From Obrimoposthia wandeli (Eukaryota), in NCBI GenBank assembly GCA_977020255.1, contig CDROCS010001231.1, positions 124,001 through 176,096 on the forward strand: a DNA stretch of 52,096 nucleotides. Direction: 5' to 3'. Of this stretch, positions 6,401 to 45,439 are shown piece by piece. The notes beneath the pieces are model-generated. The model was not told the origin of the DNA and ran no database searches. It worked only from the letters and a program-made list of their open reading frames with translations. Position 1 is the first letter of the stretch, and each line of letters opens with the position of its first letter. Position numbers and translations under genes: made by a program.

Positions 6401-7074
6401 TTATTTGTTAAATACGTTATCAATATATATTTACATTCACATTTGTATAAATTTTATTGTTTACAAGAAAATAGTTATATTTATTTGATAAATACTTCAA
6501 TAAATTCCTCTAAACAATAATTATGTACATTCAAATTTCAAACACTTCTAAGTTTAACAAGAAAATTGTTGTATTTATTTGATGTTTTTATAAAAAATTA
6601 TAAATGAAATATTCAGAGATGATATTTTTTTGTTGTGTAACGTGTGGAAAGTCTTCACTTAATAATACTGTTTTAGGTGAAAATATATACAATTTATATC
6701 CATTTGGTTTCCCATTCCCAGGATTTCGAAAATATATCACCAATGCCATTTCCGAACAGAATATTATTATCTGTTCTGTTGTGTAAATGATCTTTCCAAA
6801 GAATCTGGAAGGAAATTTATCTGGATTTTAAAATCCTAAATACTCATATGTCACCTAATTTGACAATTTTTGAAAATAAATCATAAAAGCTTTTGTAGAT
6901 GTGTTGGGAAAATATATTAACTATTTGTTTAAAAAAGAAAAATAAAAATATAAAATTTTTAAAGAAATAAAAGAAAAAAGGGAATTAATTAATTGAAAAT
7001 TAATTGGGAACTTTCCTTAATTAGGGAAAAGTTCCGATTTTTAAAATTGTGCACTTTGGCATTTTGTATATTCA

Positions 7075-7126
7075 ATCTCCGACGGGAAAAAAGCCCGTTT
7101 CGCCCTGCCGGGCTCATCAGGGAGAT
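7075..7126 (-). ncRNA. Type I hammerhead ribozyme (antisense, U3 of 5' LTR)
   Basis: Minus strand reads AUCUCC-CUGAUGA-GCCC-GGCA-GGGC-GAAA-CGGG-CUUUUUU-CCCG-UC/GGAGAU: intact core, perfect stems I (6 bp), II (4 bp), III (4 bp plus A-U), GUC triplet. Predicted cut between 7081 and 7080. Confidence 0.95.
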
Positions 7127-7129
7127 GGC

Positions 7130-7177
7130 TTGTTATCTCTAACTTCGCGGTGGATTCCGCGAAGCCAGAGATAACAA
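7130..7177 (-). other. 21-bp RNA hairpin abutting the hammerhead (also in the 3' LTR, 20031-20078)
   Basis: Minus strand UUGUUAUCUCU-GG-CUUCGCGG-AAUCCA-CCGCGAAG-UU-AGAGAUAACAA; two A/C mismatches on + become G-U pairs on -. Confidence 0.75.
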
Positions 7178-7695
7178 TAATAAAGCCAGGGAAAAGAGGG
7201 AAAGATTCCCCTTTCATGTGCCGACGAATATCGTCGACATGTGGTGTTAGTGTGCGCAAGTGCACCATTCACACACACACACACTCACTCAACATTAACA
7301 CATCACTCAACTCACTCATTCACTCTCACTACTCACTCAATCGCTCACACAATCCCTTGTTCACTCACTCTCCCTACTCACCTATTCTTTGTGCATATGT
7401 GTGTGTTTAATTTGGCATTTTACACCTGCCCAGAATTTTGAATGACGGTGAAATTTCCCGGCTGCACATGTGTGTGTGTGTGCAGAGCCGGGAAATGCCA
7501 GTTTCCTCTGCCCAAATCTCTTCTCCACACCATGTCTGGTAGTGATTCGGGCAGGCAGCGAGGATTGTTAATGGGGACTACACACTGCCGGTTTCCCACC
7601 TGCCCATCTGCTTACAGATTTATAGACACGCAAGAAGGAAATTGCTTCATAAATTTTTCACAATTTATAAAGACAAAATTATTAAATACAAAAAG

Positions 7696-7997
7696 CGAAT
7701 TATTGAAACTATTTTGAATTATATATCGAATTTATGCAATCGAATTATTGAAACTATTTTGAATTATATATCGAATTTATGCAATCGAATTATTGAAACA
7801 ATTTTGAATTATATATCGAATCTAGGCAATCGAATTATTGAAACAATTTTGAATTATATATCGAATTTATGCAATCGAATTATTGAAACTATTTTGAATT
7901 ATATATCGAAATTATGCAATCGAATTATTGAAACAATTTTGAATTATATATCGAATCTAGACAATCGAATTATTGAAACTATTTTGAATTATATATT
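7696..7997 (+). repeat. 45-bp tandem array (~6.7 copies) inside 5' LTR
   Basis: Unit CGAATTATTGAAAC(T/A)ATTTTGAATTATATATCGAATTTATGCAAT; units 3 and 6 share a CTAG variant. Confidence 0.95.
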
Positions 7998-8082
7998 ACA
8001 ATTTTGAAATACAACTACAATTTTTAGGATCATGATTTTGATTAAATAAATGTTGTTTGCAAGTTTTTGGACTTTTAACAAT

Positions 8083-9118: not shown

Positions 9119-12100
9119 TTGGTAAGAACTAACACAAGTGAAACACTACCACAGAGACCTAAATCCCAGATAAATTTTAGAACAAATAACGAATTTTTCC
9201 CTGAAACTCCGTTAGTTCACCAACACACGGATCGCTTAATTTCAACCGACTCTGAAAACCAAAACCTAACATCAAATTCAGATACAGAAAGTTTATCCTT
9301 ACCACAAACATCTGACTCAGACAACTCGTCAGAAACATCAGAAACAGTGGCAGAACCAGTACCACCTAACATAGAAATAAATAACGAACAAATAAACGAA
9401 GTACCTCAAATGGCAAATCATAGATTAAACATACCACTAGACGCATTTAATGGTGATAAATCATCTTTACCAGAATTCTTGAATAGATATGATTCTTTTG
9501 CTCAAGCATTCGAATGGACAGACCAAGAAAAACTTAGAGTTTTTCCAGCATACCTAAAAGGCACTGCCCTAACCATTTATAGAGGACTAACAAATCTACA
9601 AAAAGACACATGGGAACACTTAGTCCAGCATTTCCAAAATATGGTTTTAGGAGCACAGTCCGACCAGAACTACATAAATCAATTTAGACAACGAGAGCAA
9701 CATGTAGGAGAACCCACAAATATATTCGCAGTCGAATTACGACGACTTGCATTAAAATCTTTTCCCGAAATAGAAGAAGCACAAAGAGAACGATTACTTT
9801 TACATCAATTTTTACATGGATTAAATAACAAAATTCGAGATCACCCTGCCTTACTAGAAGTAGAAAATTTTCAACAGGCTATAGGAAAAGCTCAACTAGT
9901 AGAAGCAAGACTGAATATGATACAGCAAACCGAAGTTTCAGCATTATCTTTTGAAAAAATAGAACGACCACAAACGCCACCAAACTACAACCAATCTAGG
10001 AATTTTAACCAAGATACTCAATATAATTTTCAAAATCCTCAACAATTTAGACCACCAATAAATAATTTTTATAGAAACCAGACAAACAGAAATTTTGCAA
10101 ACTCACAATTTACACAAAGATTTTTTCAAAAATGCACAAATTGTGGACTCCAAAACCATACAATAGAAAATTGTCGAAAATTAAGTAACATAAAATTTTG
10201 CAGATTTTGCAAAAAAGACAATCACACAATTGAAACTTGTAGAAAATTAATAAATAGACAGAGTAATAATACACTACCAAGGAATAATAACTTCAATAAA
10301 CCAAATAATTATGACAATAATCAAAATAGATATTTTAATAATGATACAAAATTTTGTAAGATTTGTAATATGAAAAATCACAACACCAATGACTGTGGAA
10401 AATTAAACACAATGATGAATCAATTTGGAAACACAACAATAAAACAACAACCACAAGTTCAAAAAACAGTACAATTCAGTACTCAAGATCAACAATATAC
10501 CCCAAGAAACCCTATTCACACTATAGAAAATACAGAAACAACTCCAAACACAGACGAATTAGCATTGTTAAAATTACGACTTAAAGAAATACACCAACAA
10601 TGCCATAACAATGAACCACAAACAGATAGAACAAACTTACAATCCGAATTTGGAGACATGTTTAGAGATAGTTGTTTGACATTACAAAAAAATAAATATA
10701 CAATCACAAAAACAAACCAAACTACTCAAACACAAGAAAAGAAAGTAAAACACAAGAAAAATCATAAAACAATAAAAAATCAAAAAACTAAAATTTTTAA
10801 GAATACAAATAATCTTAATAAAATGATGAAAAAATTATGGAAAATTATTCAGATAATATTAATAATATGTCTAATTATGAACATGATAAAACCAATTAAT
10901 GCTTTAGAAGCATATGATTGTTCAAAATATAAAATTCAAAATAAATATTCTTTAATGGATTTACAGCAATGTGCAGACGCTGACCCAAATGAGGTAAAAA
11001 TCCAAAATACTAAGTTGTATCAAGTATATCAGGAAACAGATTTCATATATGCAGAAGTTTTCGAATGTAGAGTACATGTAGAGACATTTATAACATATTG
11101 TGGACAACATAGTCACAATTCAATAGTAAAACCAGCATTAGGAAAAACACCAATAATAGTTGACGCTTTAAATTGTAAAGATGCTTTCGCAACAGGAGAA
11201 TTGAGAATAGATAGAGAAATTAAAGTCCGAGCGGCGAAAAATAAAATAATTCAACAAATGATATCCGTTGTAGGTACGATTAAATCTGATGGAGAATGTA
11301 CAACAGGAACTTATGTAGTAATGGGAGTTAAGCAAAGTGGTTTAGTAGTTATTAAAAATTTTGAAGTCGAACTAAGAACTTTCAAAGCAACATTCGACCC
11401 TTCTACAAACACAATGGTAACAATGCCATTTTGTGAAGCAAACATAGGTCACTGTAACACGGGTTCTTCAATACTTTACTACAAAGTAAAAATCGATCAA
11501 TGTAAATTAATACATTTAAAATCAGAAACTTTTCAAATAATTCAAGGAAAAAGATTTAGAGATGATCCGGAACTAGATCAACAAATTCCAAAGGACATAC
11601 ACAAAATATATAGAACTAGAAAAATACGTAAAACACCAACTCCAACTATATTAATGTCTATTGAACAAGGTTCAGGAATGCGATTTATTAAAAAGAAAGA
11701 GGAATCCCGATGTGGACACTCTGTTTATACAACTAATTATAAAGGAATATATTTAAGTAATGAAAAAATACATAATGCAAAAACGACACCAACTAAATTT
11801 GATATTAAAAATTATGATTATTTTAACAATAAATTAGATTATTTTTATCACAAAGGACTAATGACAATAGAAGCAATATATAGAGAAACCATAATGAATG
11901 ATTGTAAATTAAATCAGGAAATATTAAAAACGAAATTGGCAATTATTGCAACTAACCCAGAATTAATAACACCATTATTACCATTAGCTGACGGTACTTT
12001 TGGAAGAGTAATGGGAGAGGTGTTATACACTTATCAATGTAAAAAAGTAATAGTTAACATAAGAAATCATCAAAAATGTACAAAAGAATTACCAATTTCT

Positions 12101-13405
12101 TACAAAAATAATTCATTATTTGTAGAACCAATCACTAGAATCATACTTTTTAACACTTTTAGCATAAAAGAAATAAACTGCTCAAACATAATGGCACCTC
12201 ATTATCAAATTTCAAAATATATTTGGATTTCACTTCCAAGAAGAGATATTGTCGCAGAACCACAAAAATTACAATTAACCACTCTCAGCAACGACATCAA
12301 TATACAATCAGATAACGAATTAAACACAAAAGGAATTTATATACAGGAAGATATAGATAAGTTAAGAAAAGAAATTTTATTTCCACAAATAAGATCCAGA
12401 ATTTTAACACAAATCATAGAAAGATCAGTACCTGACGGAATTAGCCGTCCCGATTACGACTTATTACTTTCTCCAAATCATTTTATAAAAGCCACTAAAA
12501 ACACCATGTCAAAAATATGGGGTAAATTTTTAATTTTTGGACAAGCATTTTCTGGATTAGTTGGAATATATGCTCTATTAATTTGCTTTAAGATTCTTCT
12601 AAGTCAAATTTTATCAACATATTATATTTATAAAGTTGGAGGATTAACATGGAAATTAATCTTAGGATGTTTCCCATTTTTGGCAAAATTCCTTATTTTT
12701 AATCATCATCAAAACATAGTAAACACATTATCAAATGAAATGCGAGAAACAAATATACAAAAAATTACAAGTACCAAAGAAACAGAAAAAACGGAATCTT
12801 CACAATATCCTGATTTAGAAAAATATATAGATAAAACAACTATACAAAAATCAACTGCACCAACAATATATACAATAAATCAAAAAGATAACGATAAACG
12901 ACCATATGTAAAGGTAGAAATTAACGAATATAAACTTAAAGCTTTAATTGACACAGGATCAAGCGTAACAGTTTTAGACGAATCTTTCTTAAAAACACAA
13001 CAAAAATTACTTCTTCTTAAGGAAAATAGTCAAGTCACAGCAGCAAACGGTCAACCCGTAGATATAATAGGAAAATTAGACTGTCTTTTTAAAATAGGAA
13101 ATAAATTCATAAAAATACCTACAAGAATAATGAAAAATTGTCCTTGCCAAATGATCATAGGAATAGATACATTAAGAAGATTAGGAAATAATTTCCACTT
13201 TGATTTTGAAAAAAATCAAATAAAAGACATTTACAGACCTAACGCCAAAGATGAATACGAGTTAGAAATAAAAGGAGATATCATTCTCCAACCAAGAACA
13301 GAAACAATGTTACAACTAGAAACTAACATAATCACAGAAAAATATGTATTATTTGAACCTTATAAATATCAACAAGAAACCTTGAACTACTTTTGCCAAA
13401 TATAA
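9119..13405 (+). CDS. gag-env-pro: Gag-Env-protease polyprotein (1428 aa)
   Basis: Gag capsid-like region, three CX2CX4HX4C knuckles (10133, 10199, 10355); signal-peptide-like MMKKLWKIIQIILIICLIMNMIKPINA (from 10823); Cys-rich ectodomain starting LEAYDC (10904); hydrophobic segments ~12520-12700; aspartic protease LIDTGS (D at 12950). Frame opens on TTG; first ATG at 9410. Confidence 0.93.
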   Translation: MVRTNTSETLPQRPKSQINFRTNNEFFPETPLVHQHTDRLISTDSENQNLTSNSDTESLSLPQTSDSDNSSETSETVAEPVPPNIEINNEQINEVPQMANHRLNIPLDAFNGDKSSLPEFLNRYDSFAQAFEWTDQEKLRVFPAYLKGTALTIYRGLTNLQKDTWEHLVQHFQNMVLGAQSDQNYINQFRQREQHVGEPTNIFAVELRRLALKSFPEIEEAQRERLLLHQFLHGLNNKIRDHPALLEVENFQQAIGKAQLVEARLNMIQQTEVSALSFEKIERPQTPPNYNQSRNFNQDTQYNFQNPQQFRPPINNFYRNQTNRNFANSQFTQRFFQKCTNCGLQNHTIENCRKLSNIKFCRFCKKDNHTIETCRKLINRQSNNTLPRNNNFNKPNNYDNNQNRYFNNDTKFCKICNMKNHNTNDCGKLNTMMNQFGNTTIKQQPQVQKTVQFSTQDQQYTPRNPIHTIENTETTPNTDELALLKLRLKEIHQQCHNNEPQTDRTNLQSEFGDMFRDSCLTLQKNKYTITKTNQTTQTQEKKVKHKKNHKTIKNQKTKIFKNTNNLNKMMKKLWKIIQIILIICLIMNMIKPINALEAYDCSKYKIQNKYSLMDLQQCADADPNEVKIQNTKLYQVYQETDFIYAEVFECRVHVETFITYCGQHSHNSIVKPALGKTPIIVDALNCKDAFATGELRIDREIKVRAAKNKIIQQMISVVGTIKSDGECTTGTYVVMGVKQSGLVVIKNFEVELRTFKATFDPSTNTMVTMPFCEANIGHCNTGSSILYYKVKIDQCKLIHLKSETFQIIQGKRFRDDPELDQQIPKDIHKIYRTRKIRKTPTPTILMSIEQGSGMRFIKKKEESRCGHSVYTTNYKGIYLSNEKIHNAKTTPTKFDIKNYDYFNNKLDYFYHKGLMTIEAIYRETIMNDCKLNQEILKTKLAIIATNPELITPLLPLADGTFGRVMGEVLYTYQCKKVIVNIRNHQKCTKELPISYKNNSLFVEPITRIILFNTFSIKEINCSNIMAPHYQISKYIWISLPRRDIVAEPQKLQLTTLSNDINIQSDNELNTKGIYIQEDIDKLRKEILFPQIRSRILTQIIERSVPDGISRPDYDLLLSPNHFIKATKNTMSKIWGKFLIFGQAFSGLVGIYALLICFKILLSQILSTYYIYKVGGLTWKLILGCFPFLAKFLIFNHHQNIVNTLSNEMRETNIQKITSTKETEKTESSQYPDLEKYIDKTTIQKSTAPTIYTINQKDNDKRPYVKVEINEYKLKALIDTGSSVTVLDESFLKTQQKLLLLKENSQVTAANGQPVDIIGKLDCLFKIGNKFIKIPTRIMKNCPCQMIIGIDTLRRLGNNFHFDFEKNQIKDIYRPNAKDEYELEIKGDIILQPRTETMLQLETNIITEKYVLFEPYKYQQETLNYFCQI
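10904..12780 (+). other. env: Chuvirus/Tas-type (herpes gB-like, class III) glycoprotein domain within ORF1
   Basis: Motifs AYDC..YSL...C, ECRVHV...YCGQHSH, GEVLYTYQC...C..ELP....F..P.TRI, GIY..EDI..LR..I.FP match my recollection of the chuviral glycoprotein family found in Pao/Anakin and nematode elements; not confirmed by search. Confidence 0.8.
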
Positions 13406-15350
13406 TTTGTAAAATAAAAAACAACACAATACCAATCAGAATCCTAAATGCAGACATTAATGAAATTCATCTCAAGGAAGGAGTACGTCTTGGAAAAATA
13501 AGTGTTATTCAAAATATTGAATTAATAGATAATGATAAAATAGAAGATAAATCTACGATAAATTTTAACGATATCAAATTAAATGATTATGAAAAATCAA
13601 AACTTAAAACTTTAACAGAAAAATATGATGTAATATTTGCTAAAAATGAATACGATTTAGGTCGAACAAATTTGATAAAACATAATCTTCCGTTAACAAC
13701 AAACACAGCAATAAAACAACGACCCTACCGAATTCCATATGCCTACAGAGATGAGGCTCAAAGACAAATAAAATGAATGTTAGAAAATGAAATTGTTAGA
13801 AGACGTTTTTCTGCATGGACATCACCTGTTGTTTTAGTAAAAAAGAAAGATGGTTCTTTGAGATTTTGCGTAGACTACAGAAAACTAAACGAAGTCACTC
13901 ACAAAGATACTTATCCACTGCCAAGAATTGATGAAATATTAGACAAACTAAAAAATGCACAAGTATTTACAACTTTAGATTTACAGAGTGGATACTGGCA
14001 AATAGAAATTGAGGAGTCAGATAAATATAAAACAGCTTTCTCAACAGGAGAAGGATTGTATGAATTCAATGTCTTACCATTTGGATTAACCGGAGCTCCA
14101 GCAACATTTCAGAGATGTATGAGCCATATTTTAATGGATGCAGATCACGTAATGGTATATATCGATGACATTCTTATTTTTTCGAAAAATTTTGAAGAAC
14201 ATTTAAAATATTTAGAAAACGTATTCTTAAGATTACAGGTAGCAGGATTAAAACTAAAACCAAAGAAATGTGAATGGATAAAAGATAAAGTAAATTACTT
14301 AGGACATGCTGTATCAGCAAAAGGAATACAACCAGACGAGAGTAATGTAGAAAAGATTAAAAATTTTCCAATCCCAAAAACAGTAAAAAATATATAGGAA
14401 TTTTTAGGGCTTGCAGGATATTATCGAAGATTTATTAGAAATTTCGCACAAATAGCAATACCATTAAATAAACTTATTAAAAAAGATGAAAAATTTGAAT
14501 GGGAAAAAGAACAACAAGAATCTTATGAATATTTAAAACAAAAACTAATCGAAAAACCTATACTTAGATATCCTAATTTTAATAACTCATTTTTAGTTAT
14601 GACTGACGCCAGTGGTTATGCGTTAGGAGCAGTTTTAGGACAACAGGAAAATAACGAAAAAGATCATGTGATAGCATATGCGAGCAGAGGTCTTAAAAAA
14701 CATGAAAAGAATTACTCAACGATAGAAAGAGAATGCCTAGCTATTTGTTTCGCAATGGAACATTTTAAACATTACTTATTAGGTCGAAAGGTTTATGTTT
14801 ACACAGATCAAAGACCATTACAATGGCTTTTAAATCATAAGGATACAACATCTAGATTAATGAGATGGGCATTGATTTTACAAAAATATGATATTGAAAT
14901 AAAATATAGAAAAGGAAAATCTAACGCTAATGCAGATTGTCTATCACGAATAAGAGAAGAAATAAACGAAATAACTGCAAATGACATCGAATTAAATCTT
15001 TTTACAATAATTCAAGCTAAATATGATAAAAAAATAATTACTAAACTTCAAAGCAAAGATAATGAAATTCAGCAAATAACTAAATACATTAGCACAAACG
15101 AAGTACCAACAGATGAAAAATTAAGAAAACATTTAAAAATATACGAATCACGATACAAATATAGTAATGAAATATTATATTATTTAAATGACAAAAATCT
15201 ATATTCACTAGTTATTCCTAAAGAAATTCAGTGTCAATTACTTCTTCAATATCATAATGGAGCCCTAGGAGGACATTTATCATCAAAAAAGACACATTCA
15301 CGATTAAATTTAAAATACTATTGGATTGACATGAAAGAAGATGTAAAAAT
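13393..15350 (+). CDS. pol: Pol: reverse transcriptase, RNase H and integrase zinc-finger start (interrupted in this sequence)
   Basis: WTSPVVLVKKKDGSLRFCVDYRKLN, PFGLTGAPATFQR, YIDDILIFS, TDASGYALGAVL, ERECLAI, NANADCLSR. One frame throughout with in-frame TGA (13774) and TAG (14395); -1 shift needed near 13391 (from PR) and at the A5 run 15345-15349 (into WCKTCEIC). Confidence 0.93.
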
Positions 15351-17666
15351 TGGTGTAAAACATGTGAAATATGTCTTAAACGGAAAAATACTTTACGTAC
15401 CACAAAAATACCTTTAAAGCCAATACCTTATCCATCAGCCCCCATGGAAACTGTTGCCATGGATGTAATGGGACCATTACCTGAAACACCCCGAGGAAAT
15501 CGATATATAATAGTATTTTCTGATTATTTTACAAGATGGCCAGAGGCTTTTCCAACACATGATCATAAGGCTGAAACCATCGCGAAGGTTTTAGTCGAAA
15601 AAATTATTTTTACTTTCGGTGCACCCCGAAAATTATTAACCGACAAAGGTCCTGAATTTATAAATAATGTATTAGCGTCAATAGCTGAAATTTTTCACAT
15701 AAAGACGATCAATACAACACCATATCACCCTCAAACTGACGGGTTAGTAGAAAGATTTAATAGAACCCTCGAAGATATGATGGCATCATACACAAACAAC
15801 AATCAAACAGATTGGGATTTACACATACCTCCATGCCTTTTTGCATATAGAACATCAGTACATGCATCCACAGGAGAAACACCTTTTTATCTTATGTTCC
15901 TCAGAGATCCTCAAATGCCTATTGACCTAACATTACTACAACCTACTACACAATATTTAGAAATACCTGAATATAAAATAGAAATTAGAGAAAGAATAAA
16001 ACTAGCATTCGAAAAAGCTAAACTATTTGTAAAAAACATACAAGAAAATTACAAAGAATATTATGATAGAAGAACTAAGCCATCAAATATAAAAAGCGGA
16101 AGTAAAGTGATGATTCACAATCCACAAATCAATGTAGGATTGTCTCACAAATTATCAAAACCATACAAAGGACCATATACAGTCATTAGTACCAACGGAA
16201 CCAACATAACAGCTAAACTAGATAATGAACCAAAATCAAAAGAAATAAGAGCACATATAAACAGATGTCGAGAAATACCTGAGGAGAATACAAAAGTAAA
16301 AAGTCACAAATATAACTTAAGATCAACTAATGATAATACAGTTCTACAAATGTTGACAATAAAAAACTCACAAAAACAAAACAAAACTATTTTGAGTCAT
16401 CAAACCAGAAATACAATAAAAATATCAATAAAAGAAATTGGTAAAATAATGATGTTATTGATAATATATTTTATAATAAAATATAACCTACTGAAAGTAA
16501 ACGCAACAAACATAAATGACAATCAATCAATCATACAACAACAAACAAATAAATACGACTCAACAACTCATCTCATAAAAAATTTTGGATTAATAACAAT
16601 AATACCTAAAATCACATCAATAAAGTTAAAAATTTCTCTTTTTACAAACAAAACAGGAAATGTGCAAATCACACAAACAGATAGAAAACAAAATATAATT
16701 ATTTCAGGAATAAAATCACAAAAATATACAATACCATTTTTAAGAACAGAAACACAATATAAAATAAGAATTAAGTCGAAATTAAAAAATATAACACTCT
16801 ATGAAAGAATTATAGAAACTCACATATACCTAGCATCAATATTAAAAACAACAGCAAAATATATATCAAAACATAAAATAATGATAAAATGGGAATTTCA
16901 ACTAAAAATAGATGACTTAGATAAAGCCCTCATTAGAATTAGATATAGAGGACATAATGCTAATTTTTGGAAAGACTCAGAAAAACAATTAGAAAATACA
17001 CAAACTAAAACAAATTTAACCATAGAAAATATAAGATATCCAGAGAAAATAATAATAGACAATAGAGAATGCGTAATCACTAATAAACCAATAATGTACA
17101 GACAATGGAGTCAAAAGTTTGAAAGTTATAAAAATCTAACAAAATTAACAATTTTAGGAAATAAGATATCCAAACTATATCAACCTACAATTTTTTGTGG
17201 TCGTTGGTCAACAGTAAAAATTAAGAAATATGTTAAAGATATAACCACAAAACAATTGCTACATACCACAACATTTACATCAAAAATTTACAGAGTTACA
17301 AATCAAGTTGAAATTACGGAAAAAATAAGAATTAAATTAAAATTAAAAACAACAGAAATAATATCATATAAATCATTTAATGAAAGTTTAAAAATGCACT
17401 ATAGTAAACAAGAACATTCAAGGAATGAAAATAAAGAAGAACTTATAATAATAGTTATAGTAATCGAAATAATTACATTTATAAATCAAATATCATGGAA
17501 AATGTTAATTTTGAAACATACAAAAACGATAGAAACAAAACAACGAAAACACTTTTGTGGGCCCCCAGGCCCTTTTACTATTTATATTATCCCCAAGGAT
17601 GATAATTCTTCAGAATTATCCATAAATACTGTAATAGAAAATAGAAAAAGAAATATAACACAATAA
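15351..17666 (+). CDS. Integrase core and GPY/F domain fused in frame to a predicted secreted/membrane protein (signal-like segment, FN3-like repeats, TM)
   Basis: CEIC zinc ligands, AMDVMGP / LTDKGPEF / GLVERFNRTL (D,D35E), KPYKGPY. Then MMLLIIYFIIKYNLLKVNA (16449), YTIPFLRTETQYKIRIKSK, IKWEF...RIRYRG...W, hydrophobic LIIIVIVIEIITFI (~17442-17500). Integrase call is firm; FN3 call is inference. Confidence 0.85.
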   Translation, partial: WCKTCEICLKRKNTLRTTKIPLKPIPYPSAPMETVAMDVMGPLPETPRGNRYIIVFSDYFTRWPEAFPTHDHKAETIAKVLVEKIIFTFGAPRKLLTDKGPEFINNVLASIAEIFHIKTINTTPYHPQTDGLVERFNRTLEDMMASYTNNNQTDWDLHIPPCLFAYRTSVHASTGETPFYLMFLRDPQMPIDLTLLQPTTQYLEIPEYKIEIRERIKLAFEKAKLFVKNIQENYKEYYDRRTKPSNIKSGSKVMIHNPQINVGLSHKLSKPYKGPYTVISTNGTNITAKLDNEPKSKEIRAHINRCREIPEENTKVKSHKYNLRSTNDNTVLQMLTIKNSQKQNKTILSHQTRNTIKISIKEIGKIMMLLIIYFIIKYNLLKVNATNINDNQSIIQQQTNKYDSTTHLIKNFGLITIIPKITSIKLKISLFTNKTGNVQITQTDRKQNIIISGIKSQKYTIPFLRTETQYKIRIKSKLKNITLYERIIETHIYLASILKTTAKYISKHKIMIKWEFQLKIDDLDKALIRIRYRGHNANFWKDSEKQLENTQTKTNLTIENIRYPEKIIIDNRECVITNKPIMYRQWSQKFESYKNLTKLTILGNKISKLYQPTIFCGRWSTVKIKKYVKDITTKQLLHTTTFTSKIYRVTNQVEITEKIRIKLKLKTTEIISYKSFNESLKMHYSKQEHSRNENKEELIIIVIVIEIITFINQISWKMLILKHTKTIETKQRKHFCGPPGPFTIYIIPKDDNSSELSINTVIENRKRNITQ

Positions 17667-18419: not shown

Positions 18420-19592
18420 ATGGATAACAATCACCTGGATACGACTCCAGACCAGCTCACTCGGTCAGATCAAACAAAAAGCACAGCAAAAATAGAAAGA
18501 GGAAAAACGGAAAATATGCCAGAAAGGTGGTTTTTAGCAAAATTCTTGTATCAAAAGATGCGTCAGTTTAGCATTGCATACTTTAGAAACAACGGAGGAA
18601 GAAAAATGTTTTCAAATCAAACATTTCTTCCTAATAATAAAATTACCAATAAAATTACCACAGAAGAAAGAACTAGCGCACTTATTTTTTCCAATGAAAA
18701 AAGACCAACCCATATGGCTCTCAGTGAAATATTCCCCAACATTAATTGTGAAAAAATATATATTCACGTGGCACTAGGAGTAGCCCATTTAAAAACCAAA
18801 TCAGATAAGACATTAAACTTTCTGATGATAGGAAATCACACCTACACCTTACAAGCAGCTCAATTAGAAAATCAATATAGCATAAAAATAGGAAGAGGAC
18901 CAAATCTATTATTTATAGAAAAAATAAGAAAAGCAGAAGAACCTCAACAAATAGCCCTTTTTGAATTAAAAAAGAAGCCAGCAATTTTATTCCTCGATTG
19001 CGAAATGGTGATATCAGTAGATAAACAGCCAGTGTTAGCAAGTGTTTCTATTATAAATTACATAGGTAACGTAATTATAGATACACTGTGCGTAACTAGA
19101 AACAGAGTAAGAAATTACGTTACTAGAATAACTGGACTGTCAGATAGAAAGTTACAAGGATGTAGAGATGCTGATGAAGTAATTGAGGAAGTAAAAAACA
19201 TTGTGTATGGTAACATCATCGTAGGTGTGGGATTAACAAACGATTTAAAAGCTTTACGCCTACAGAAATGGATGTTATTCAACATTGTTGATTTAGGAAT
19301 ATCCAAAAGCATAAAATCAGAACTAAATCACAATCACCCAAATATTGGACTCGCCAACATGGTGCGGAAATACTTAAATATAGAAACACAAAAAGGAGTT
19401 CACACTAGCATGGAAGATGCAAATCACACCCGAAAAATTTTCATAATGAAGGAGGAAATGTTGATTAGAGAGTTTGATTTGACCGAGGTGATGAATCCAC
19501 CATCTAGCGAGAACAACCCCAGTTCATCGTTCTCGCATAAGACCGGAAACTCGGAGTCCGGTACACAAAACTCCCCGATTTTGTTGGATTAA
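18420..19592 (+). CDS. Accessory DEDDh 3'-5' exonuclease (REX4/ISG20-like) with ~190-aa unknown N-terminal domain
   Basis: ExoI LDCEMV (18996), YVTRITGL, ExoII GVGLTNDLKAL, ExoIII HTSMEDA (19401); all four acidic residues and the His are present. Confidence 0.9.
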   Translation: MDNNHLDTTPDQLTRSDQTKSTAKIERGKTENMPERWFLAKFLYQKMRQFSIAYFRNNGGRKMFSNQTFLPNNKITNKITTEERTSALIFSNEKRPTHMALSEIFPNINCEKIYIHVALGVAHLKTKSDKTLNFLMIGNHTYTLQAAQLENQYSIKIGRGPNLLFIEKIRKAEEPQQIALFELKKKPAILFLDCEMVISVDKQPVLASVSIINYIGNVIIDTLCVTRNRVRNYVTRITGLSDRKLQGCRDADEVIEEVKNIVYGNIIVGVGLTNDLKALRLQKWMLFNIVDLGISKSIKSELNHNHPNIGLANMVRKYLNIETQKGVHTSMEDANHTRKIFIMKEEMLIREFDLTEVMNPPSSENNPSSSFSHKTGNSESGTQNSPILLD

Positions 19593-19802: not shown

Positions 19803-19975
19803 TGTTGGGAAAATATATTAACTATTTGTTTAAAAAAGAAAAATAAAAATATAAAATTTTTAAAGAAATAAAAGAAAAAAGGGAATTAATTAATTGAAAA
19901 TTAATTGGGAACTTTCCTTAATTAGGGAAAAGTTCCGATTTTTAAAATTGTGCACTTTGGCATTTTGTATATTCA

Positions 19976-20027
19976 ATCTCCGACGGGAAAAAAGCCCGTT
20001 TCGCCCTGCCGGGCTCATCAGGGAGAT
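19976..20027 (-). ncRNA. Type I hammerhead ribozyme (antisense, U3 of 3' LTR)
   Basis: Identical to 7075-7126; predicted cut between 19982 and 19981, 12,901 nt from the other site. Confidence 0.95.
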
Positions 20028-20598
20028 GGCTTGTTATCTCTAACTTCGCGGTGGATTCCGCGAAGCCAGAGATAACAATAATAAAGCCAGGGAAAAGAGG
20101 GAAAGATTCCCCTTTCATGTGCCGACGAATATCGTCGACATGTGGTGTTAGTGTGCGCAAGTGCACCATTCACACACACACACACTCACTCAACATTAAC
20201 ACATCACTCAACTCACTCATTCACTCTCACTACTCACTCAATCGCTCACACAATCCCTTGTTCACTCACTCTCCCTACTCACCTATTCTTTGTGCATATG
20301 TGTGTGTTTAATTTGGCATTTTACACCTGCCCAGAATTTTGAATGACGGTGAAATTTCCCGGCTGCACATGTGTGTGTGTGTGTGCAGAGCCGGGAAATG
20401 CCAGTTTCCTCTGCCCAAATCTCTTCTCCACACCATGTCTGGTAGTGATTCGGGCAGGCAGCGAGGATTGTTAATGGGGACTACACATTGCCGGTTTCCC
20501 ACCTGCCCATCTGCTTACAGATTTATAGACACGCAAGAAGGAAATTGCTTCATAAATTTTTCACAATTTATAAAGACAAAATTATTAAATACAAAAAG

Positions 20599-20900
20599 CG
20601 AATTATTGAAACTATTTTGAATTATATATCGAATTTATGCAATCGAATTATTGAAACTATTTTGAATTATATATCGAATTTATGCAATCGAATTATTGAA
20701 ACAATTTTGAATTATATATCGAATCTAGGCAATCGAATTATTGAAACAATTTTGAATTATATATCGAATTTATGCAATCGAATTATTGAAACTATTTTGA
20801 ATTATATATCGAAATTATGCAATCGAATTATTGAAACAATTTTGAATTATATATCGAATCTAGACAATCGAATTATTGAAACTATTTTGAATTATATATT
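20599..20900 (+). repeat. 45-bp tandem array inside 3' LTR
   Basis: Same unit order and variants as in the 5' LTR. Confidence 0.95.
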
Positions 20901-23281
20901 ACAATTTTGAAATACAACTACAATTTTTAGGATCATGATTTTGATTAAATAAATGTTGTTTGCAAGTTTTTGGACTTTTAACAGATGTGTTGGGTTGGGG
21001 TAGTGTCGGATTAAGACATGCGCTTTGGAGGCAGCAGCCCACGACCCTCCAGATATTATATGGCAGTTTTTTTCCCTAAAGCAATATATTGCTTTTAAAA
21101 CATTACTTTACTGTCAGTTCACGTCAACTATCAAGTGTTTTAAGAAAATGAAAGTTCTACAAAGTTGCTCACTTTATTTATTTTGTTTTATCGGCAGATT
21201 ATTTCGTTTTTAATTGACAAGCGGATAGTATATGCAGGTACGTTTGGGTAATAGTAGTTATCTATTATTATTTGATAGCATAAAATTGCGTAAAGCAAAT
21301 ATGTGAATTATACTTTTCTTACCAATTTATAAGTTTTTATTATTTTGTATTACACTGTCAAACTAGTATAATATGTCTGGTAAAATATTGAATTATTTGA
21401 TTATTGTTACGAGTTGATTGAATTTACCGTTGTCGTAAACAGAAGAAAACACCTTATATAATTCGACATATTATACAAAATAAGTAGCTGTATTGTAACA
21501 GCTTACAAAAACATTTTCTCAAAATATCAATTTAGTAATATTGTTATCATAATATCATATTCTTGCTTACCAAAATATTAAAAGAGGTATTTCTAACATT
21601 AACTTTTAGTAATCGGACGTTCAGATAGGATGTCTGCAGAAACTATAGCCCATGGACCTACAATATAATAATCCAGCCCTGTGTTCGGGACAAAAGCTAG
21701 CTACCGAAACCAGAAAATAAATCTGGGGTCTCTCTATTTGCAGGTCACGCATTCTATCCCAGAACTACCGTACATTGTAATTTCACCCGAATTTCTAAAT
21801 GGGGATTATGGACCTAAAATTATCAGTAACATATTTTATCAAATATAAATCTTTTAAATTGTAAAAATTAACAAAGCAAAAGGCGATACATATAAACTGT
21901 GGGGAGAAACTATGTCTCATTATTTTTTAAAATAATTTAATCTATAATTTTTTGAGTATTTAAAAATTATTCGAACTGCCTGGACTATATTATTCAGTAA
22001 TTTATTCCAATGCTATTGCAGATTTTCATGGTAAATGTAACAGTCAATTTCATTTATAAAAGTTTATTGTCCAAAACTGATTATACAAATCAAATGTCGG
22101 TTATTTGTAATACATATATTTCATGGGAGAGGCACAAAAGTATGTCTTTCTTCTGAGACGATTTTTTACACGATAGAAGATAATCAGAACACGAGCTAAT
22201 TGTGAAATAGGATACTATCCTCCTGATTGAATGTTATTTTATATTTATTAAGAGGAAATAATAATTACCCAAAAATTAACTATGGCCTATTGCAAAGTGA
22301 TATGTAGCTTTTGAATTTGTTATTGATTTTTATTTTAAGTCAATAGGTTATATTTATAATTACATAATAGCTCAAAGTGGAAGAGATCTAAATCAAATGG
22401 TGACAGGAAAGAACAAAATTCTTTCAACAATGAAGCTTTCGTTAAAAATGTCTCTCCGGTATTTTGATCACTTTATGAACTATCTTACTTTATGGTCATG
22501 TAATAATCTCAAAATATCAATTGCATGCTAGAAATGAAATTAACTTTCAAAATGATTTAATAAGTTGATTAAATGCCATATTGGCCTCACGTTCCAAAAT
22601 AACCATTCACCTTTACCATCTAAGAAATTAATTATTTTTTGGATGAACCCGTTTACTGTCACACTTCAAAATGCAGCTCATGTGGTTTAAATTTATAGAA
22701 GACTTTGAAGTATAGAAATCACGCAAATCCCTAGACTTTTAATCCTGTAAATAATACTCAAATCCATGCAGTTCCCTCTGCACCGAATGAGTCAACCAAG
22801 ATTTACATGAGGACGCTTTTAAAATATAAATAAAATACCTGATTTTAAAATTTTGTCATTGCCTACATTAACATGAGATTTTATTAATTTGGGAATAAAT
22901 TATTCATTATTCTAGCTTCCAAAGTAAATTTTTTAAACTGCCAGAACTAAGGTAACCTAGAATTGATCTTCAACTTGACTGTTATTTTGATTTTATAACA
23001 CCCCATGAAATTCAATAATAAAACTATTCGACGTTTTGTAGTAATATAGTAATGTAATCTAGAGAATAACAAATAAACAACATGTGCATGTGTAAACAAA
23101 TTTCAGGTAGAAAAGATTACATCATAGCTTGAGGGAGACAGAAATAAGTGTATAGAAACTAGGCATAAATAATCACTGACACACACAAATACAGCCAGTG
23201 ACCAGATTTAATACAAGTGCATCTGGTATTGCACTTGAATGTTTGGTGCACACATAATAAGCTCAGCACATACAAACATTG

Positions 23282-25797
23282 TCAATCCTTTTTATCAGCC
23301 TCATCATCTTCATCTAAAATAATTGTAAAGTCACCTGCAGCGTCTTCTTCGTCATCCTTCTCCTCTTCTCCATCATCCTTCTTTTCCTCTTCTCCATCAT
23401 CCTTCTTCTCCTCTTCTTCATCATCCAGCTCCAGAGTGAATGAACCCTCTGCAACATTATCCTCATCTTTCTCTACGCCTTCTTCTTTTTTATCAGTTTC
23501 TTTCTCTTTATTTTCTTTCTTTGTCTCATCTTCCTTTTTATCAGTTTCTTTATTTTTGTCATCTTCCTTTTCTTCAGCATCAGTTTCTTTCTCCTTATTT
23601 TTTTTCTTTGATTCATTTTCCATTTCTTCAGTTTCTTTTTCTGTCTTCTTATTTTCTATCTTTTCATCCTCTTTGTCATCACCTTCAGACTCTTTCTTCT
23701 TATCAGAACTCGTTTCTTTATCATCGGCATCATCGTCTGTTTTCTTTTCTGTTTCTTCTTCATCATCAAGTTCCAGAGTAAAAGAATCTTCAACATCGTT
23801 CTCTTCATCTTTTTTAGTTTCTTTTTTCTCATCTTCTGACTTTTCTGTCTCCCCTTCCTTATTTTCAGACTTATCACTTTTAGTCTTTTTGTCCTTTTTC
23901 TTCTTTTCCTTGGGTTTTTTAGTTTCTTCTTTTTTACCTTTATCTTCCTTTTCTTCATCTTTAGTTTCTTTTTTCTCCTCTTCTTCCTCCTCTTCATCTT
24001 CCTCTTCTTCGCTATCATCATCCTCGTCTTCTTCAGAATCTCCTTTTTCTTTCTTATCATCATCTTCGATATTTTCTTTGTTTTCTTCCGATTCTTCGGA
24101 TTTTTGACTCTAAAAATAAAGATGTGATTATTGGCTTTCATAGAAAACATTAGAAATAAGTACGTACGGGTGCAGGAACAGGTCAAGCAATTGCATTCGC
24201 ATAATTACAATCTAAATAATTGAAACATGCAAATTCGAGTTCAACACGAAATGACATAAACTTTTTCCTGTAGATTACCTTCTTTTCTTTCGCGTTCTTT
24301 TTCTGAATGGAAATTAGTTTTGACAGTTAAACATAAAAATTGTAAATTAATACATCACATTACAAAAGGAACAAGTGAAATAAATATAAAATCAATTTCG
24401 CGCACTCCGATGCGATTTATGGGGTCCTTCAAAAAGTAAAAGTTATTTTTTAATAAATTATATAATGAACTGTAAAAGTTTTAATAAAAATTGTAATTTG
24501 TGTAATTTATTAAAAATATTTTTTTCAACGATTATGCTCAAAATAAAATTAATTTTTATAATCAAAACCTATTTCAAAACGGGAAAAATTTTACAAGTGT
24601 TATCATTTGATTCTGGTGCGGGAAAATAAAATGGGTCATTGGTAAGAGATATTTATGGTTTTTATTTAGCTGAGGAAACATGTAGTTTTTCTCCTGCTCT
24701 AGAGAAATGTGTAAATTATCTTTCGGAAATATTTATTGAATTAGAAAAACCGACCCCGACCTTAACGGCTCGACAAGAATTATCCCGGGTGTGTATCGAA
24801 TTGGAAGAGTTTTCAAAATCCCAGAATCAGAAATCAGAAACGTCTTATAAAATGCAATAATATGTTAGTTGAGACCTTAACATCTGCACTACGACGTTTG
24901 CTTCATCTCCAAAATTGGGTGCAAAGTTTCTAAAAATAGATTTTTCGCGAATAGAAGTGTGAAATGACGACTAAATAATATTTTCTGGAATTTCCCTTAT
25001 AGATTCTTAATTTATGAACTGTTAGCTTCTATTTGAGCTATAACGGACCTCAAGACGGAAATCGGTTCTTTATGAAAATGAGAACGAAAGAAGGAAAGAT
25101 CAATAATATTTCGGTTTTATTACATTACACAGATATTTGTGGGGTTTTAGAGTGTCTAACTGAATGTTGGGGAACTATTTTAACTATACAGTCCCATATA
25201 CTAATTCAGTCAACATCAAATCAAAAATACTCCGAGATTTTGGGTTTCGATCTCCTCGAGTTCCCTTTTTGAGGCACATGAGGATAATTGGTCCTCAGCT
25301 AATCTGAGTACTAATATATAGATTAAATACGAATGAAAATAACAGTTCACAACTATTAGTATTGGCGCAAAATATTTCCAGGGAGAATATGAAGGATTTC
25401 TATTGCGTACCTCTTCCGCTCCGGGGATCTTGAGAAGCACCTCCACATCTTCAGATTCATTGGCCACTGACATGTCTTCGAAGTCCTGACAAAAGAAATT
25501 CATTCAATTCACTGCAAATCCAGTAAAGTACCCCAATATATTCGTCGTCGAGAAAAACATAAGGCGGCAGAGCTTTTGGATTTACACTGCGGATTTTCTT
25601 TAGCACAGTGTCCTTTGTTTCCTGATTGTTTACAAAGCAAATATCAATTTCTGTAAATTCGATTTTACGACCACAAAAAATCATCCTCAACAAGTCTTGT
25701 TTCTTCTTTATCTAAAAGAAAAATAAATATGGAAAAGAATTGGGATACAAACCATTTGATTGCCCGATGTACTTGATACATACACTTTGATACTCAT
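23282..25797 (-). CDS. SH3BGR: SH3BGR-family (glutaredoxin-fold) protein with long Glu/Lys/Asp-rich C-terminal tail
   Basis: Exons 25797-25753 (MSIKVYVSSTSGNQM), 25711-25532 (IKKKQD...EIDI...LPPYVFLDDEYIG), 25485-25411 (DFEDM...), probable 24302-24279 and 24109-23282 (275 aa acidic, stop TGA). All phase 0 with GT-AG. N-terminal domain is firm; joining of the tail exons is inferred. Confidence 0.8.
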
Positions 25798-44707: not shown

Positions 44708-45439
44708 TGTTAGGATTACAATTTTAAAAAATAAAAATACAATTTAAAAATTTTAATAATTTCTTAATTAGGAAATAACGAGAGAAATTTCCTTAATTAA
44801 GAAAATATTTTAGGGTATGAAATGCACTTTGGCATTTAATAATCAGTTTATTTAGTTCAGTCCCCGACCGGCTTAACCAGTTTCGCCCTACCGGGCTCGT
44901 CAGAGGACGGCAGATTTATCTCTGGCTTCGGTGGGCAAAATTCCCGCGAAGTCAGAGATAAAAATAAAAAATAAAGGTCCACTTACCTGCACACAGTCGC
45001 CCAGGTTGTGCAGAGCTCACCAATTTTCCACATTCTCCTTCCCGGACTACCTTCCCCGGATCCTGACTGCCAAGATACAATATCTTTGTCTCAGACAGTT
45101 TTCCTGTCTGGAGGGAGAGGAAAAATGCAGTTTTCCTCGATCAACAGCAGACCAAACTTCTATCAGCTGCATCTGCCAACGGTCAATGTCAATTTCCCTG
45201 CTGTTATCGAGGTCGCTGCCTGTCCCCTCTCTCTCTCCCATTTGTCTGTTTCTCTTGCCATTAACTAGCGCTGATTTCGGAAGCTGCTGCCAGGATCACG
45301 CTATATGGGAGATATCACCGTGCATTTGTCGCACACTGACTCCTGGATCGATCCTTGGTGGAATTTATATAAAACAATACAACAAATGTGATTGAGTAAT
45401 AGAATTTGAACAAGTGATTTTGATTATTTATTTTCAACA
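44708..45439 (+). mobile_element. Solo LTR (732 bp) of a related family
   Basis: TGTT...AACA termini with TATA duplication (44704-44707 and 45440-45443); shares TGCACTTTGGCATTT, hammerhead, TTATCTCT...AGAGATAA hairpin, TATAAA (45368) and TGATTTTGATTA with the full-length LTR. Confidence 0.85.
44860..44908 (-). ncRNA. Type I hammerhead ribozyme (antisense in solo LTR)
   Basis: Minus strand GUCCU-CUGACGA-GCCC-GGUA-GGGC-GAAA-CUGG-UUAAG-CCGG-UC/GGGGAC; core intact, stem I needs a 1-nt bulge. Confidence 0.88.

What the first reader, a model, noticed from the sequence alone, without database searches (positions are those of the whole stretch)
7075..7126. Perfect type I hammerhead ribozyme in U3, antisense to the retrotransposon
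The minus strand gives the full CUGAUGA...GAAA...GUC core with three closed stems. It lies ~540 bp upstream of the TATA box, so the sense genomic RNA carries only the inactive complement. Only antisense transcripts, from an LTR antisense promoter or host read-through, would self-cleave. Retrozyme and Penelope hammerheads, as I recall them, act on the transposing strand.
Basis: partly seen in the sequence, partly recalled or inferred. Interest (0 to 1): 0.95.

Follow-up and report, generated by a model that had tools for sequence, protein, structure and literature searches.

The report
Antisense hammerhead ribozyme in retrovirus-like LTR
A complete self-cutting "hammerhead" RNA motif lies on the non-coding strand of the long terminal repeats of a retrovirus-like element, and a diverged copy in a related solo repeat nearby keeps every essential base, so it is probably a maintained device that would cut only antisense transcripts.

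Summary
Window 7075-7126 (minus strand) is a complete type I hammerhead. All core bases are present, helices I, II and III have 6, 4 and 5 bp, and cleavage is predicted between 7081 and 7080. Rfam Hammerhead_1 scores it 32.4 bits, just under the gathering score of 34 (E 3.4e-6). No comparable motif appeared in 400 shuffled windows. It lies about 175-225 nt inside the 1179-bp LTR of a 14.1-kb plus-strand GAG-ENV-POL Ty3/gypsy-like element, and the 3' LTR holds an identical copy.

The new evidence is a probable solo LTR of a related family at 44708-45439. Its first ~270 nt are homologous at about 70% identity and carry a diverged hammerhead on the same strand. Seventeen of 52 columns differ, none at the 14 essential positions (P about 0.001). 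All helices stay paired through three double changes and two G-U changes.

So the motif is real, belongs to this LTR lineage and looks constrained. Antisense transcription, cleavage and biological purpose are untested. The solo-LTR copy is predicted to misfold. Seven distant relatives from public contigs show no hammerhead, and no closer relatives were found. This is a new variant of a known kind, of moderate to high interest.

The parts
7075..7126 (-). Type I hammerhead motif (HHR1) in the 5' LTR. C17 is 7081 and the predicted cut is 7081/7080.
19976..20027 (-). Identical hammerhead copy in the 3' LTR. C17 is 19982.
44860..44908 (-). Diverged hammerhead (HHR2) in a related solo LTR. The core is intact apart from the free position N7 (U to C), all three helices are kept, and C17 is 44866.
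   Evidence: Rfam gives only 23.5 bits, to Hammerhead_3. The active fold is predicted to be disfavoured.
6902..8080 (+). 5' LTR (1179 bp, TGTTGGG...TTAACA), with the 4-bp target-site duplication GATG at 6898-6901.
19803..20983 (+). 3' LTR, 99.66% identical to the 5' LTR, with the target-site duplication GATG at 20984-20987.
44708..45439 (+). Probable solo LTR of a related family (TGTTAGG...TCAACA), flanked by TATA on both sides. No PBS or coding remnants follow it.
   Evidence: The boundaries are inferred.
6902..7184 (.). The U3 5' module conserved between the two LTR families (about 70% identity). It holds an AT-rich end, a TTAATTAAGGAAA hairpin, the block AAATGCCAAAGTGC, the hammerhead and the large hairpin.
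7132..7175 (.). A 19-bp hairpin 5 nt upstream (on the minus strand) of hammerhead helix I. It is conserved in the solo LTR at about 44916-44961.
7127..7129 (-). GCC directly 5' of helix I, a candidate 3-4 bp pseudoknot partner of loop II (GGCA in HHR1, GGUA in HHR2). This is a hypothesis only.
   Evidence: Precedent for such pseudoknots: PMC3088659.
8083..8101 (+). Putative primer-binding site beginning TGG, 2 nt after the 5' LTR.
   Evidence: read directly. No matching tRNA was identified.
9119..13405 (+). ORF1, a single uninterrupted frame holding gag (three CCHC knuckles), a Monjiviricetes-type fusion glycoprotein and an aspartyl protease.
13393..17666 (+). pol (RT, RNase H, integrase), interrupted by in-frame stops at 13774-13776, 14395-14397 and 15415-15417 and by a frame change near 15381-15443.
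18420..19592 (+). 3' ORF with a DEDD-type 3'-5' exonuclease domain (RNase_T).
   Evidence: Relatives L003 and L019 have the same ORF.

Best explanation
This is a genuine type I hammerhead ribozyme motif that belongs to the 5' part of U3 in a lineage of GAG-ENV-POL Ty3/gypsy-like retroelements, encoded on the strand opposite the element's genes.

Shown: the motif, its orientation, its place in both LTRs, and its retention in a diverged related LTR with an intact core and compensated helices.

Inferred: any RNA polymerase II transcript crossing an LTR in the antisense direction folds the motif and cuts itself after C17 (7081/7080 and 19982/19981). Such transcripts could come from an LTR antisense promoter, host read-through or a silencing-RNA precursor locus. 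The cut would leave a 2',3'-cyclic phosphate upstream and a 5'-OH downstream.

A transcript entering from the 3' side would lose its capped 5' part before it reached the antisense copy of the coding region. A full antisense read-through would be cut at both LTRs, releasing a fragment of about 12.9 kb with no cap and no tail.

The most likely benefit to the element is disabling or re-routing antisense RNA that would otherwise pair with genomic RNA or feed small-RNA silencing. That last step is speculation.
For: - Motif: full core, three helices, Rfam E 3.4e-6, and the active fold is the minimum-free-energy fold. There were 0 hits in 400 shuffles.
- Part of the LTR: it is identical in both LTRs of an element with TG..CA ends, a 4-bp target-site duplication and a PBS.
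- Conservation: a related solo LTR shares the first ~270 nt at about 70% identity and carries the motif on the same strand.
- Core constraint: 17 of 52 columns differ and none falls at the 14 essential positions. P is 0.0013 by random placement, or 0.007 at 70% background identity. The only core change is at the free position N7.
- Helix constraint: 29 of 29 pair cells stay paired, with three double changes (A-U to G-C, U-A to C-G, G-C to U-G) and two C-G to U-G changes. Slid controls pair in only 34-52% of cells.
- Strand: the three U-G pairs are A-C mismatches on the plus strand, so pairing is kept specifically on the minus-strand RNA.
- Possible tertiary contact: loop II can pair with the conserved GCC 5' of helix I in both copies. 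Hammerheads commonly use such pseudoknots (PMC3088659).
Against: - There are no expression or cleavage data.
- The Rfam score is below the gathering score.
- Helix I is only 6 bp and has no internal loop for the canonical loop-loop contact. The proposed pseudoknot would use 3-4 nt of a 4-nt loop, which may be sterically strained.
- In the solo LTR the active fold (-13.9 kcal/mol) loses to a competing fold (-20.7 kcal/mol).
- The hammerhead segment as a whole is no more conserved than its flanks (72% against 70%).
- The wider region folds equally well on both strands.
- There are only two independent sequences, both from one genome.
- Seven distant relatives (34-46% protein identity) show no hammerhead.
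Confidence: 0.5

Rival explanations
1. Inherited relic. A hammerhead-bearing sequence (a retrozyme, Penelope-type or SINE-like repeat, or a chance-assembled motif) entered an ancestral LTR in reverse orientation. It persists by descent in U3, which tolerates insertions, and does not act in cells.
For: - HHR2 is predicted to misfold.
- No canonical tertiary contact is visible.
- The segment is no more conserved than its flanks.
- The motif is absent from the distant relatives examined.
- Hammerheads are common in animal repeats (PMC3088659, PMC7229834).
Against: - None of the 14 essential positions changed against a background of about 30% divergence.
- The helix changes are compensatory or wobble-compatible, and only on the minus strand.
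- The module runs to the very LTR terminus in both families and has no insertion signatures of its own.
Confidence: 0.3
2. 3'-end maker for an LTR-borne antisense non-coding RNA. An antisense promoter inside the LTR makes a short structured RNA, including the conserved 19-bp hairpin just upstream. The hammerhead defines its 3' end.
For: - The conserved hairpin lies 5 nt upstream of helix I in both LTRs.
- The region 6990-7260 is very structured, with z = -8.
Against: - No antisense promoter was identified.
- The hairpins are DNA palindromes that fold equally on both strands.
- Conserved blocks also lie downstream of the cut site.
- The U6 run in loop III argues against RNA polymerase III in LTR1.
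Confidence: 0.1
3. DNA-level regulatory module. The 5' part of U3 is a cluster of palindromic protein-binding sites, and its resemblance to a hammerhead is incidental.
For: - There are several palindromes and perfectly conserved blocks outside the hammerhead: AAATGCCAAAGTGC and TAATTAAGGAAA.
- Folding shows no strand bias.
Against: - The conserved CUGANGA and GAAA segments are not palindromic, yet they are exactly the hammerhead core.
- The G-U substitutions break the DNA palindrome but keep the RNA pairing on one strand.
- The Rfam E-value and the shuffle control argue against coincidence.
Confidence: 0.07
4. Chance match in an AT-rich genome.
For: The score is below Rfam's gathering score.
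Against: - E is 3.4e-6 for the region. Scaling that E-value linearly with sequence searched, my own calculation for Hammerhead_1 alone gives about 1e-3 for a 1-Gb genome.
- There were 0 hits in 400 shuffles.
- An independent diverged copy keeps the motif.
Confidence: 0.02

Closest known systems
Type I hammerhead ribozymes (Rfam RF00163), including bacterial and phage examples
   Same: It has the same catalytic core, an open helix I and capped helices II and III. Helix II with its loop (GCCC-GGCA/GGUA-GGGC) is identical to that of hammerheads found in GC-rich prokaryotic and phage contigs (L011-L018). Near variants occur in L006-L010.
   Different: It scores 1.6 bits below the gathering score. 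Loop III is long and U-rich. Helix I has no internal loop. The genomic context is unrelated to the prokaryotic examples.
Plant LTR retrozymes (PMC4918200)
   Same: In both, a hammerhead sits inside each LTR of an element with a PBS, a PPT and a 4-bp target-site duplication, so a read-through RNA is cut at both LTRs.
   Different: Retrozymes are non-autonomous. They carry type III hammerheads on the transcribed (sense) strand and release circular RNAs of 600-1000 nt. Here the element encodes gag, env and pol, the hammerhead is type I, and it lies on the antisense strand.
Metazoan non-LTR retrozymes and Penelope-like element hammerheads (PMC7229834, PMC4209133)
   Same: Both are type I hammerheads tied to animal retroelements.
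   Different: Those lie in short tandem repeats or in pseudo-LTRs, in sense orientation, and often have a 1-2 bp helix III that needs dimerisation. This one is a single motif per LTR with a 5-bp helix III, in antisense orientation, in a Ty3/gypsy-type element.
GAG-ENV-POL errantivirus-like Ty3/gypsy elements of Nematoda, Bryozoa and Platyhelminthes (PMC13524379)
   Same: The carrier element has the same gene order, with a chuvirus/gB-type glycoprotein between gag and pol, plus LTRs and a short target-site duplication.
   Different: That paper's main text contains no mention of 'hammerhead' or 'exonuclease'. The DEDD exonuclease ORF recalls bdelloid rotifer elements instead (PMC5408684).
HDV-like ribozymes of R2, RTE and L1Tc non-LTR retrotransposons (PMC3383444; R2 as cited in PMC3088659)
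   Same: Both are self-cleaving ribozymes built into a retroelement.
   Different: Those belong to a different ribozyme class and process the 5' end of the element's own sense transcript.

Membership tests
Hammerhead ribozyme, type I (RF00163) | Conserved catalytic core: C3 U4 G5 A6 N7 G8 A9, G12 A13 A14, the A15.1-U16.1 pair, and a non-G base at position 17 | tested here: met
   All are present in HHR1 and in HHR2. Only N7 differs.
Hammerhead ribozyme, type I (RF00163) | Three helices around the core, with helix I open and helices II and III closed by loops | tested here: met
   The helices are 6, 4 and 5 bp, and this is the minimum-free-energy fold. HHR2 has helices of 4-5, 4 and 6 bp.
Hammerhead ribozyme, type I (RF00163) | Covariance-model match at Rfam's curated gathering score (an operational criterion) | tested here: inconclusive
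   The score is 32.4 bits against a gathering score of 34, full length, E 3.4e-6. Nothing was reported at the gathering threshold. HHR2 scores only 23.5 bits, to Hammerhead_3.
Hammerhead ribozyme, type I (RF00163) | A tertiary contact between helix I and loop II (loop-loop or pseudoknot), needed for fast cleavage at cellular Mg2+ | tested here: inconclusive
   Helix I has no internal loop. A 3-4 bp pairing between loop II and the GCC 5' of helix I is possible in both copies, but it is short and unproven.
Hammerhead ribozyme, type I (RF00163) | Helices maintained by compensatory change in homologues | tested here: met
   All 29 pair cells are paired and three pairs changed on both sides. Slid controls pair in 34-52% of cells. 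Only two sequences were available, so power is low (48 of 500 shuffles reach the observed value).
Hammerhead ribozyme, type I (RF00163) | Site-specific self-cleavage giving 2',3'-cyclic phosphate and 5'-OH ends | not testable with these tools
   This needs in vitro transcription or end-specific sequencing.
Plant LTR retrozymes | Non-autonomous element with no coding capacity | tested here: not met
   The element encodes gag, a glycoprotein, PR, RT, RNase H, IN and an exonuclease.
Plant LTR retrozymes | Hammerhead on the element's transcribed strand, type III | tested here: not met
   The motif is on the minus strand of a plus-strand element and is type I.
Metazoan non-LTR retrozymes | Tandem repeats of 170-400 bp, each with a type I hammerhead, and no LTR, PBS or PPT | tested here: not met
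   There is one motif per LTR and no tandem array of the module.
Penelope-like element hammerheads | Minimal hammerhead with a very short helix III in pseudo-LTRs of an element with a Penelope-type RT and GIY-YIG nuclease | tested here: not met
   Helix III has 5 bp. pol has the RVT_1, RT_RNaseH, Integrase_H2C2 and rve domains of the Ty3/gypsy type.
GAG-ENV-POL errantivirus-like Ty3/gypsy elements (the carrier) | Gene order gag, env, pol, with a class III (gB/chuvirus-type) fusion glycoprotein | tested here: met
   PF24664 matches at E 6.8e-90 between the CCHC gag and the protease, in one ORF. Relatives share this layout. The fold class itself was not tested.
GAG-ENV-POL errantivirus-like Ty3/gypsy elements (the carrier) | LTRs with TG..CA ends, a short target-site duplication and a PBS next to the 5' LTR | tested here: met

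The most novel reading that the evidence does not exclude
An envelope-bearing endogenous retrovirus lineage maintains a ribozyme on its antisense strand as a counter-defence. It would cut antisense transcripts at each LTR, whether they are piRNA or siRNA precursors, host read-through, or products of its own antisense promoter. It would thereby blunt RNA-based silencing of the element. This would be the first ribozyme known to serve a mobile element by acting on the strand that is not transposed.
Probability: 0.15. Interest if true: 0.88.

Novelty: new variant of a known kind. Interest (0 to 1): 0.62.

Why it matters
Every retroelement-borne self-cleaving ribozyme I could find in the literature processes the element's own sense RNA. 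That covers the hammerheads of retrozymes and Penelope-like elements and the HDV-like ribozymes of R2, RTE and L1Tc.

A conserved hammerhead on the opposite strand of an autonomous, envelope-carrying LTR element would mean selection acts on what happens to antisense transcripts of a transposon. Antisense RNA is the raw material of small-RNA silencing. That makes a ribozyme-based anti-silencing or antisense-insulation function directly testable with a 52-nt motif and simple point-mutant controls.

If the motif proves inert, it is still a clear example of hammerhead capture by an LTR.

Tried and rejected
- **Close relatives of the element, to test conservation.**
  - An exact look-up and a homology search with the exonuclease ORF found nothing.
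  - An exhaustive HMMER search with gag-env-PR gave no hit above 48% identity.
  - A second search found nothing closer than 46%.
  - A viral-contig protein scan found nothing.
- **Hammerheads in seven distant relatives' contigs** (L001-L005, L019, L020). There was no Rfam hit at E of 1 or less, no descriptor hit, and no homology to the U3 module. LTR coverage of those contigs is partial, so this is weak negative evidence.
- **Pattern scans of the metagenome, prokaryotic-genome and viral collections.** These returned only GC-rich prokaryotic or phage hammerheads with the same helix II, in unrelated contexts.
- **Strand bias of RNA folding in U3.** There is none; the plus strand is slightly more stable over 6990-7260. 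I therefore dropped folding energy as an argument for the minus strand.
- **The idea that the ~280-nt module is an independent mobile insert.** I rejected it, because homology runs to the LTR terminus and both LTRs have their own target-site duplications.
- **RNA polymerase III A-box and B-box on the minus strand.** There is only a partial A-box-like match downstream of the cut, it is not conserved as a pair, and loop III holds a U6 run. I rejected it by inspection.
- **Host organism.** It could not be determined with these tools.
- **Literature.** Four searches found no report of a hammerhead antisense in an autonomous LTR element.

Full report
**1. The observation**

Read on the minus strand, 7126 to 7075 gives these parts in order:
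- helix I 5' arm AUCUCC
- core CUGAUGA
- helix II GCCC/GGGC, capped by GGCA
- core GAA
- helix III ACGGG/CCCGU, capped by CUUUUUU
- C17
- helix I 3' arm GGAGAU

Every base required for hammerhead catalysis is present, including the G10.1-C11.1 and A15.1-U16.1 pairs. C17 is base 7081, so the predicted scissile bond is 7081/7080.

A whole-window Rfam search at gathering thresholds returned nothing. A permissive search of 6800-7400 aligned Hammerhead_1 (RF00163) end to end at 32.4 bits with E 3.4e-6, against a gathering score of 34. The deficit is largely the 11-nt insertion in loop III. That E-value counts 4227 families and 1.2 kb of sequence. Scaling it linearly with the amount of sequence searched (my own calculation), Hammerhead_1 alone gives about 1e-3 for a 1-Gb genome, so chance is unlikely.

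The hammerhead fold is the minimum-free-energy fold, at -19.3 kcal/mol. A descriptor scan found only this motif and its twin in the window, and none in 400 dinucleotide shuffles.

**2. Context**

The motif occurs twice, identically, at 7075-7126 and 19976-20027. These positions lie inside two direct repeats, 6902-8080 and 19803-20983, which are 99.66% identical. The repeats begin TGTTGGG and end TTAACA. They are flanked by the 4-bp duplication GATG, and a TGG-initiated primer-binding site follows the first.

All retroelement ORFs lie on the plus strand:
- a 1428-aa ORF with three CCHC knuckles, a Monjiviricetes-type fusion glycoprotein (PF24664, E 6.8e-90) and an aspartyl protease
- then RT, RNase H and integrase
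- then an ORF with a DEDD 3'-5' exonuclease domain

pol carries three in-frame stops and one frame change, so this copy is not intact despite its near-identical LTRs.

The hammerhead is therefore antisense, about 175-225 nt from the 5' edge of a 1179-bp LTR. Candidate TATA boxes lie at 7666 and 7990 and a poly(A) signal lies at 8046. The motif is in U3 under either assignment, although the start site is not mapped.

GAG-ENV-POL gypsy-like elements with gB/chuvirus-type envelopes are described in nematodes, bryozoans and flatworms (PMC13524379). DEDD exonuclease ORFs are described in bdelloid rotifer LTR elements (PMC5408684). The carrier is a member of a known kind.

**3. A second, diverged copy**

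A loose descriptor scan picked up a hammerhead-like motif at 44860-44908, also on the minus strand. Reading the region and aligning it shows homology to the first ~270-280 nt of the LTR at about 70% identity. The homology runs right up to a TGTTAGG terminus at 44708.

The shared features, in the same order, are:
- the AT-rich end
- a TTAATTAAGGAAA hairpin
- an invariant AAATGCCAAAGTGC block
- the hammerhead
- the large hairpin

Beyond that the sequences are unalignable until a short shared block near a TCAACA end at 45439. TATA flanks both sides. No PBS and no coding remnants follow. I read this as a solo LTR of a related family; its boundaries are inferred.

**4. What the comparison shows**

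In the 52-column hammerhead alignment, 17 columns differ:
- Eleven of the differences lie in helix I, loop II and the free position N7.
- Six of the differences lie in loop III.
- None lies at the 14 essential positions.

P for that last result is 0.0013 if the variable columns were placed at random, or 0.007 at the 70% background identity.

All 29 scorable pair cells remain standard pairs. Three pairs changed on both sides: A-U to G-C and U-A to C-G in helix I, and G-C to U-G in helix III. Two more changed C-G to U-G. Sliding the 3' partners by 1-3 columns leaves only 34-52% of cells paired and at most one double change.

The three U-G pairs would be A-C mismatches in plus-strand RNA. The changes therefore preserve structure specifically on the hammerhead strand.

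With two sequences the shuffle control is weak (48 of 500 shuffles reach the observed value). This is suggestive evidence, not proof.

**5. Reasons for caution**

- The hammerhead segment overall is no better conserved than its neighbours, 72% against 70%.
- The surrounding U3 is a string of DNA palindromes that fold as well, or slightly better, on the plus strand.
- In the solo LTR, the N7 U-to-C change and a one-base deletion in helix I favour a competing fold (-20.7 kcal/mol) over the active one (-13.9 kcal/mol). That copy may be decaying.
- Helix I is 6 bp and has no internal loop, so the canonical loop 1-loop 2 contact is not evident.
- One candidate substitute is a 3-4 bp pairing of loop II (GGCA or GGUA) with the conserved GCC just 5' of helix I. 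It is compatible in both copies. Pseudoknots of this general kind stabilise about 40% of hammerheads (PMC3088659). Using nearly all of a tetraloop is questionable, however.
- Loop III of HHR1 holds a U6 run, which argues against RNA polymerase III as the source of the substrate RNA.

**6. Relatives elsewhere**

No close relative of the element exists in the protein collections. The best hits are 34-48% identical.

Seven contigs carrying distant relatives were examined. They share the glycoprotein-PR-RT-RNase H-IN layout, and L003 and L019 also carry the RNase_T ORF. They have no hammerhead on either strand and no homology to the U3 module. Their LTRs are only partly covered.

DNA pattern scans of the metagenome, prokaryotic-genome and viral collections returned only GC-rich prokaryotic or phage hammerheads that share the same helix II. 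So far the motif is specific to the two LTR families in this window.

**7. Mechanism**

*Shown:* a complete hammerhead motif, antisense, in U3 of both LTRs and of a related solo LTR, with a pattern of change that follows the hammerhead's constraints.

*Inferred:* antisense RNA polymerase II transcripts crossing an LTR would self-cleave after C17.
- Antisense RNA entering through the 3' LTR would lose its capped leader about 180 nt before the internal region.
- A full antisense read-through would be cut at both LTRs, releasing an uncapped, tail-less fragment of about 12.9 kb.

*Speculative:* this benefits the element by disabling antisense RNA that could form double-stranded RNA or feed piRNA or siRNA production, or by insulating flanking DNA from LTR antisense output.

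From memory, and not checked here: 5'-OH ends are poor substrates for the Xrn2 torpedo exonuclease. A simple terminator role is therefore less likely.

*Rivals, in order:*
1. An inherited but inert relic.
2. A 3'-end maker for a small antisense RNA that includes the adjacent hairpin.
3. A DNA-level palindromic regulatory cluster.
4. Chance.

**8. Comparison and novelty**

As a catalytic motif this is an ordinary type I hammerhead. Its context differs from each known hammerhead-bearing element:
- Plant retrozymes are non-autonomous and carry sense-strand type III motifs (PMC4918200).
- Animal retrozymes are tandem repeats without LTRs (PMC7229834).
- Penelope-like elements carry sense-strand minimal motifs (PMC4209133).

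Four literature searches found no report of a hammerhead on the antisense strand of an autonomous LTR element. I rate it a new variant of a known kind.

The window contains no N runs and no toxin gene came into question. No step had to be referred.

Noticed in passing
window 9119-13405: gag (three CCHC knuckles), a chuvirus/Monjiviricetes-type fusion glycoprotein with its own signal-like and transmembrane segments, and the aspartyl protease all lie in one uninterrupted 1428-aa frame. The envelope-like protein would be made as part of the Gag-Pro polyprotein. Distant relatives (L001, L003) even fuse it with the whole of pol.
   Followed up: partly
window 18420-19592; L003 9547-11622; L019 7920-9260: A DEDD-type 3'-5' exonuclease ORF (RNase_T) follows pol in this element and in two distant relatives. 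It looks like a stable accessory gene of the lineage. Similar ORFs are reported for bdelloid rotifer LTR elements (PMC5408684).
   Followed up: partly
window 13774-13776, 14395-14397, 15415-15417, and about 15381-15443: pol has three in-frame stop codons and one frame change, although the LTRs are 99.66% identical. Either an already defective copy was mobilised in trans, or it decayed quickly.
   Followed up: no
window 15444-17666: The integrase ORF continues for about 600 residues beyond the core domain with no Pfam match. The tail includes hydrophobic, transmembrane-like stretches.
   Followed up: no
window about 7693-7996 and 20596-20899: About seven tandem 45-nt repeats lie inside each LTR, each carrying a TATATAT box. 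The last one aligns with the only TATA-like box of the related solo LTR (45366). The real promoter may therefore be at about 7990 rather than 7666.
   Followed up: partly
window 7260-7400: A CA/CACTCA-rich low-complexity tract lies inside U3. It is absent from the solo LTR.
   Followed up: no
L019 10040-10400: The closest database relative (46% identity in glycoprotein-PR) has a GC-rich, palindrome-laden island of about 370 nt starting about 25 nt inside its putative 3' LTR. The position is analogous to the hammerhead module, but no known ribozyme matches it.
   Followed up: partly
L006-L018: Thirteen GC-rich prokaryotic or phage contigs carry hammerheads, of types I and III, whose helix II and loop are identical or nearly identical to the LTR motif (GCCC-GGCA-GGGC). 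This is probably convergence on a favoured helix II.
   Followed up: partly
window 37646-38978 (minus strand): Two ORF-sized exons resemble a BRO1/ALIX-type (PDCD6IP-like) protein by eye, which suggests a metazoan host gene with introns. This was not tested with any tool.
   Followed up: no
window 23217-24186: A low-complexity tract on the minus strand encodes an acidic, lysine-rich repeat (E/K/D-rich). It may be a host exon.
   Followed up: no
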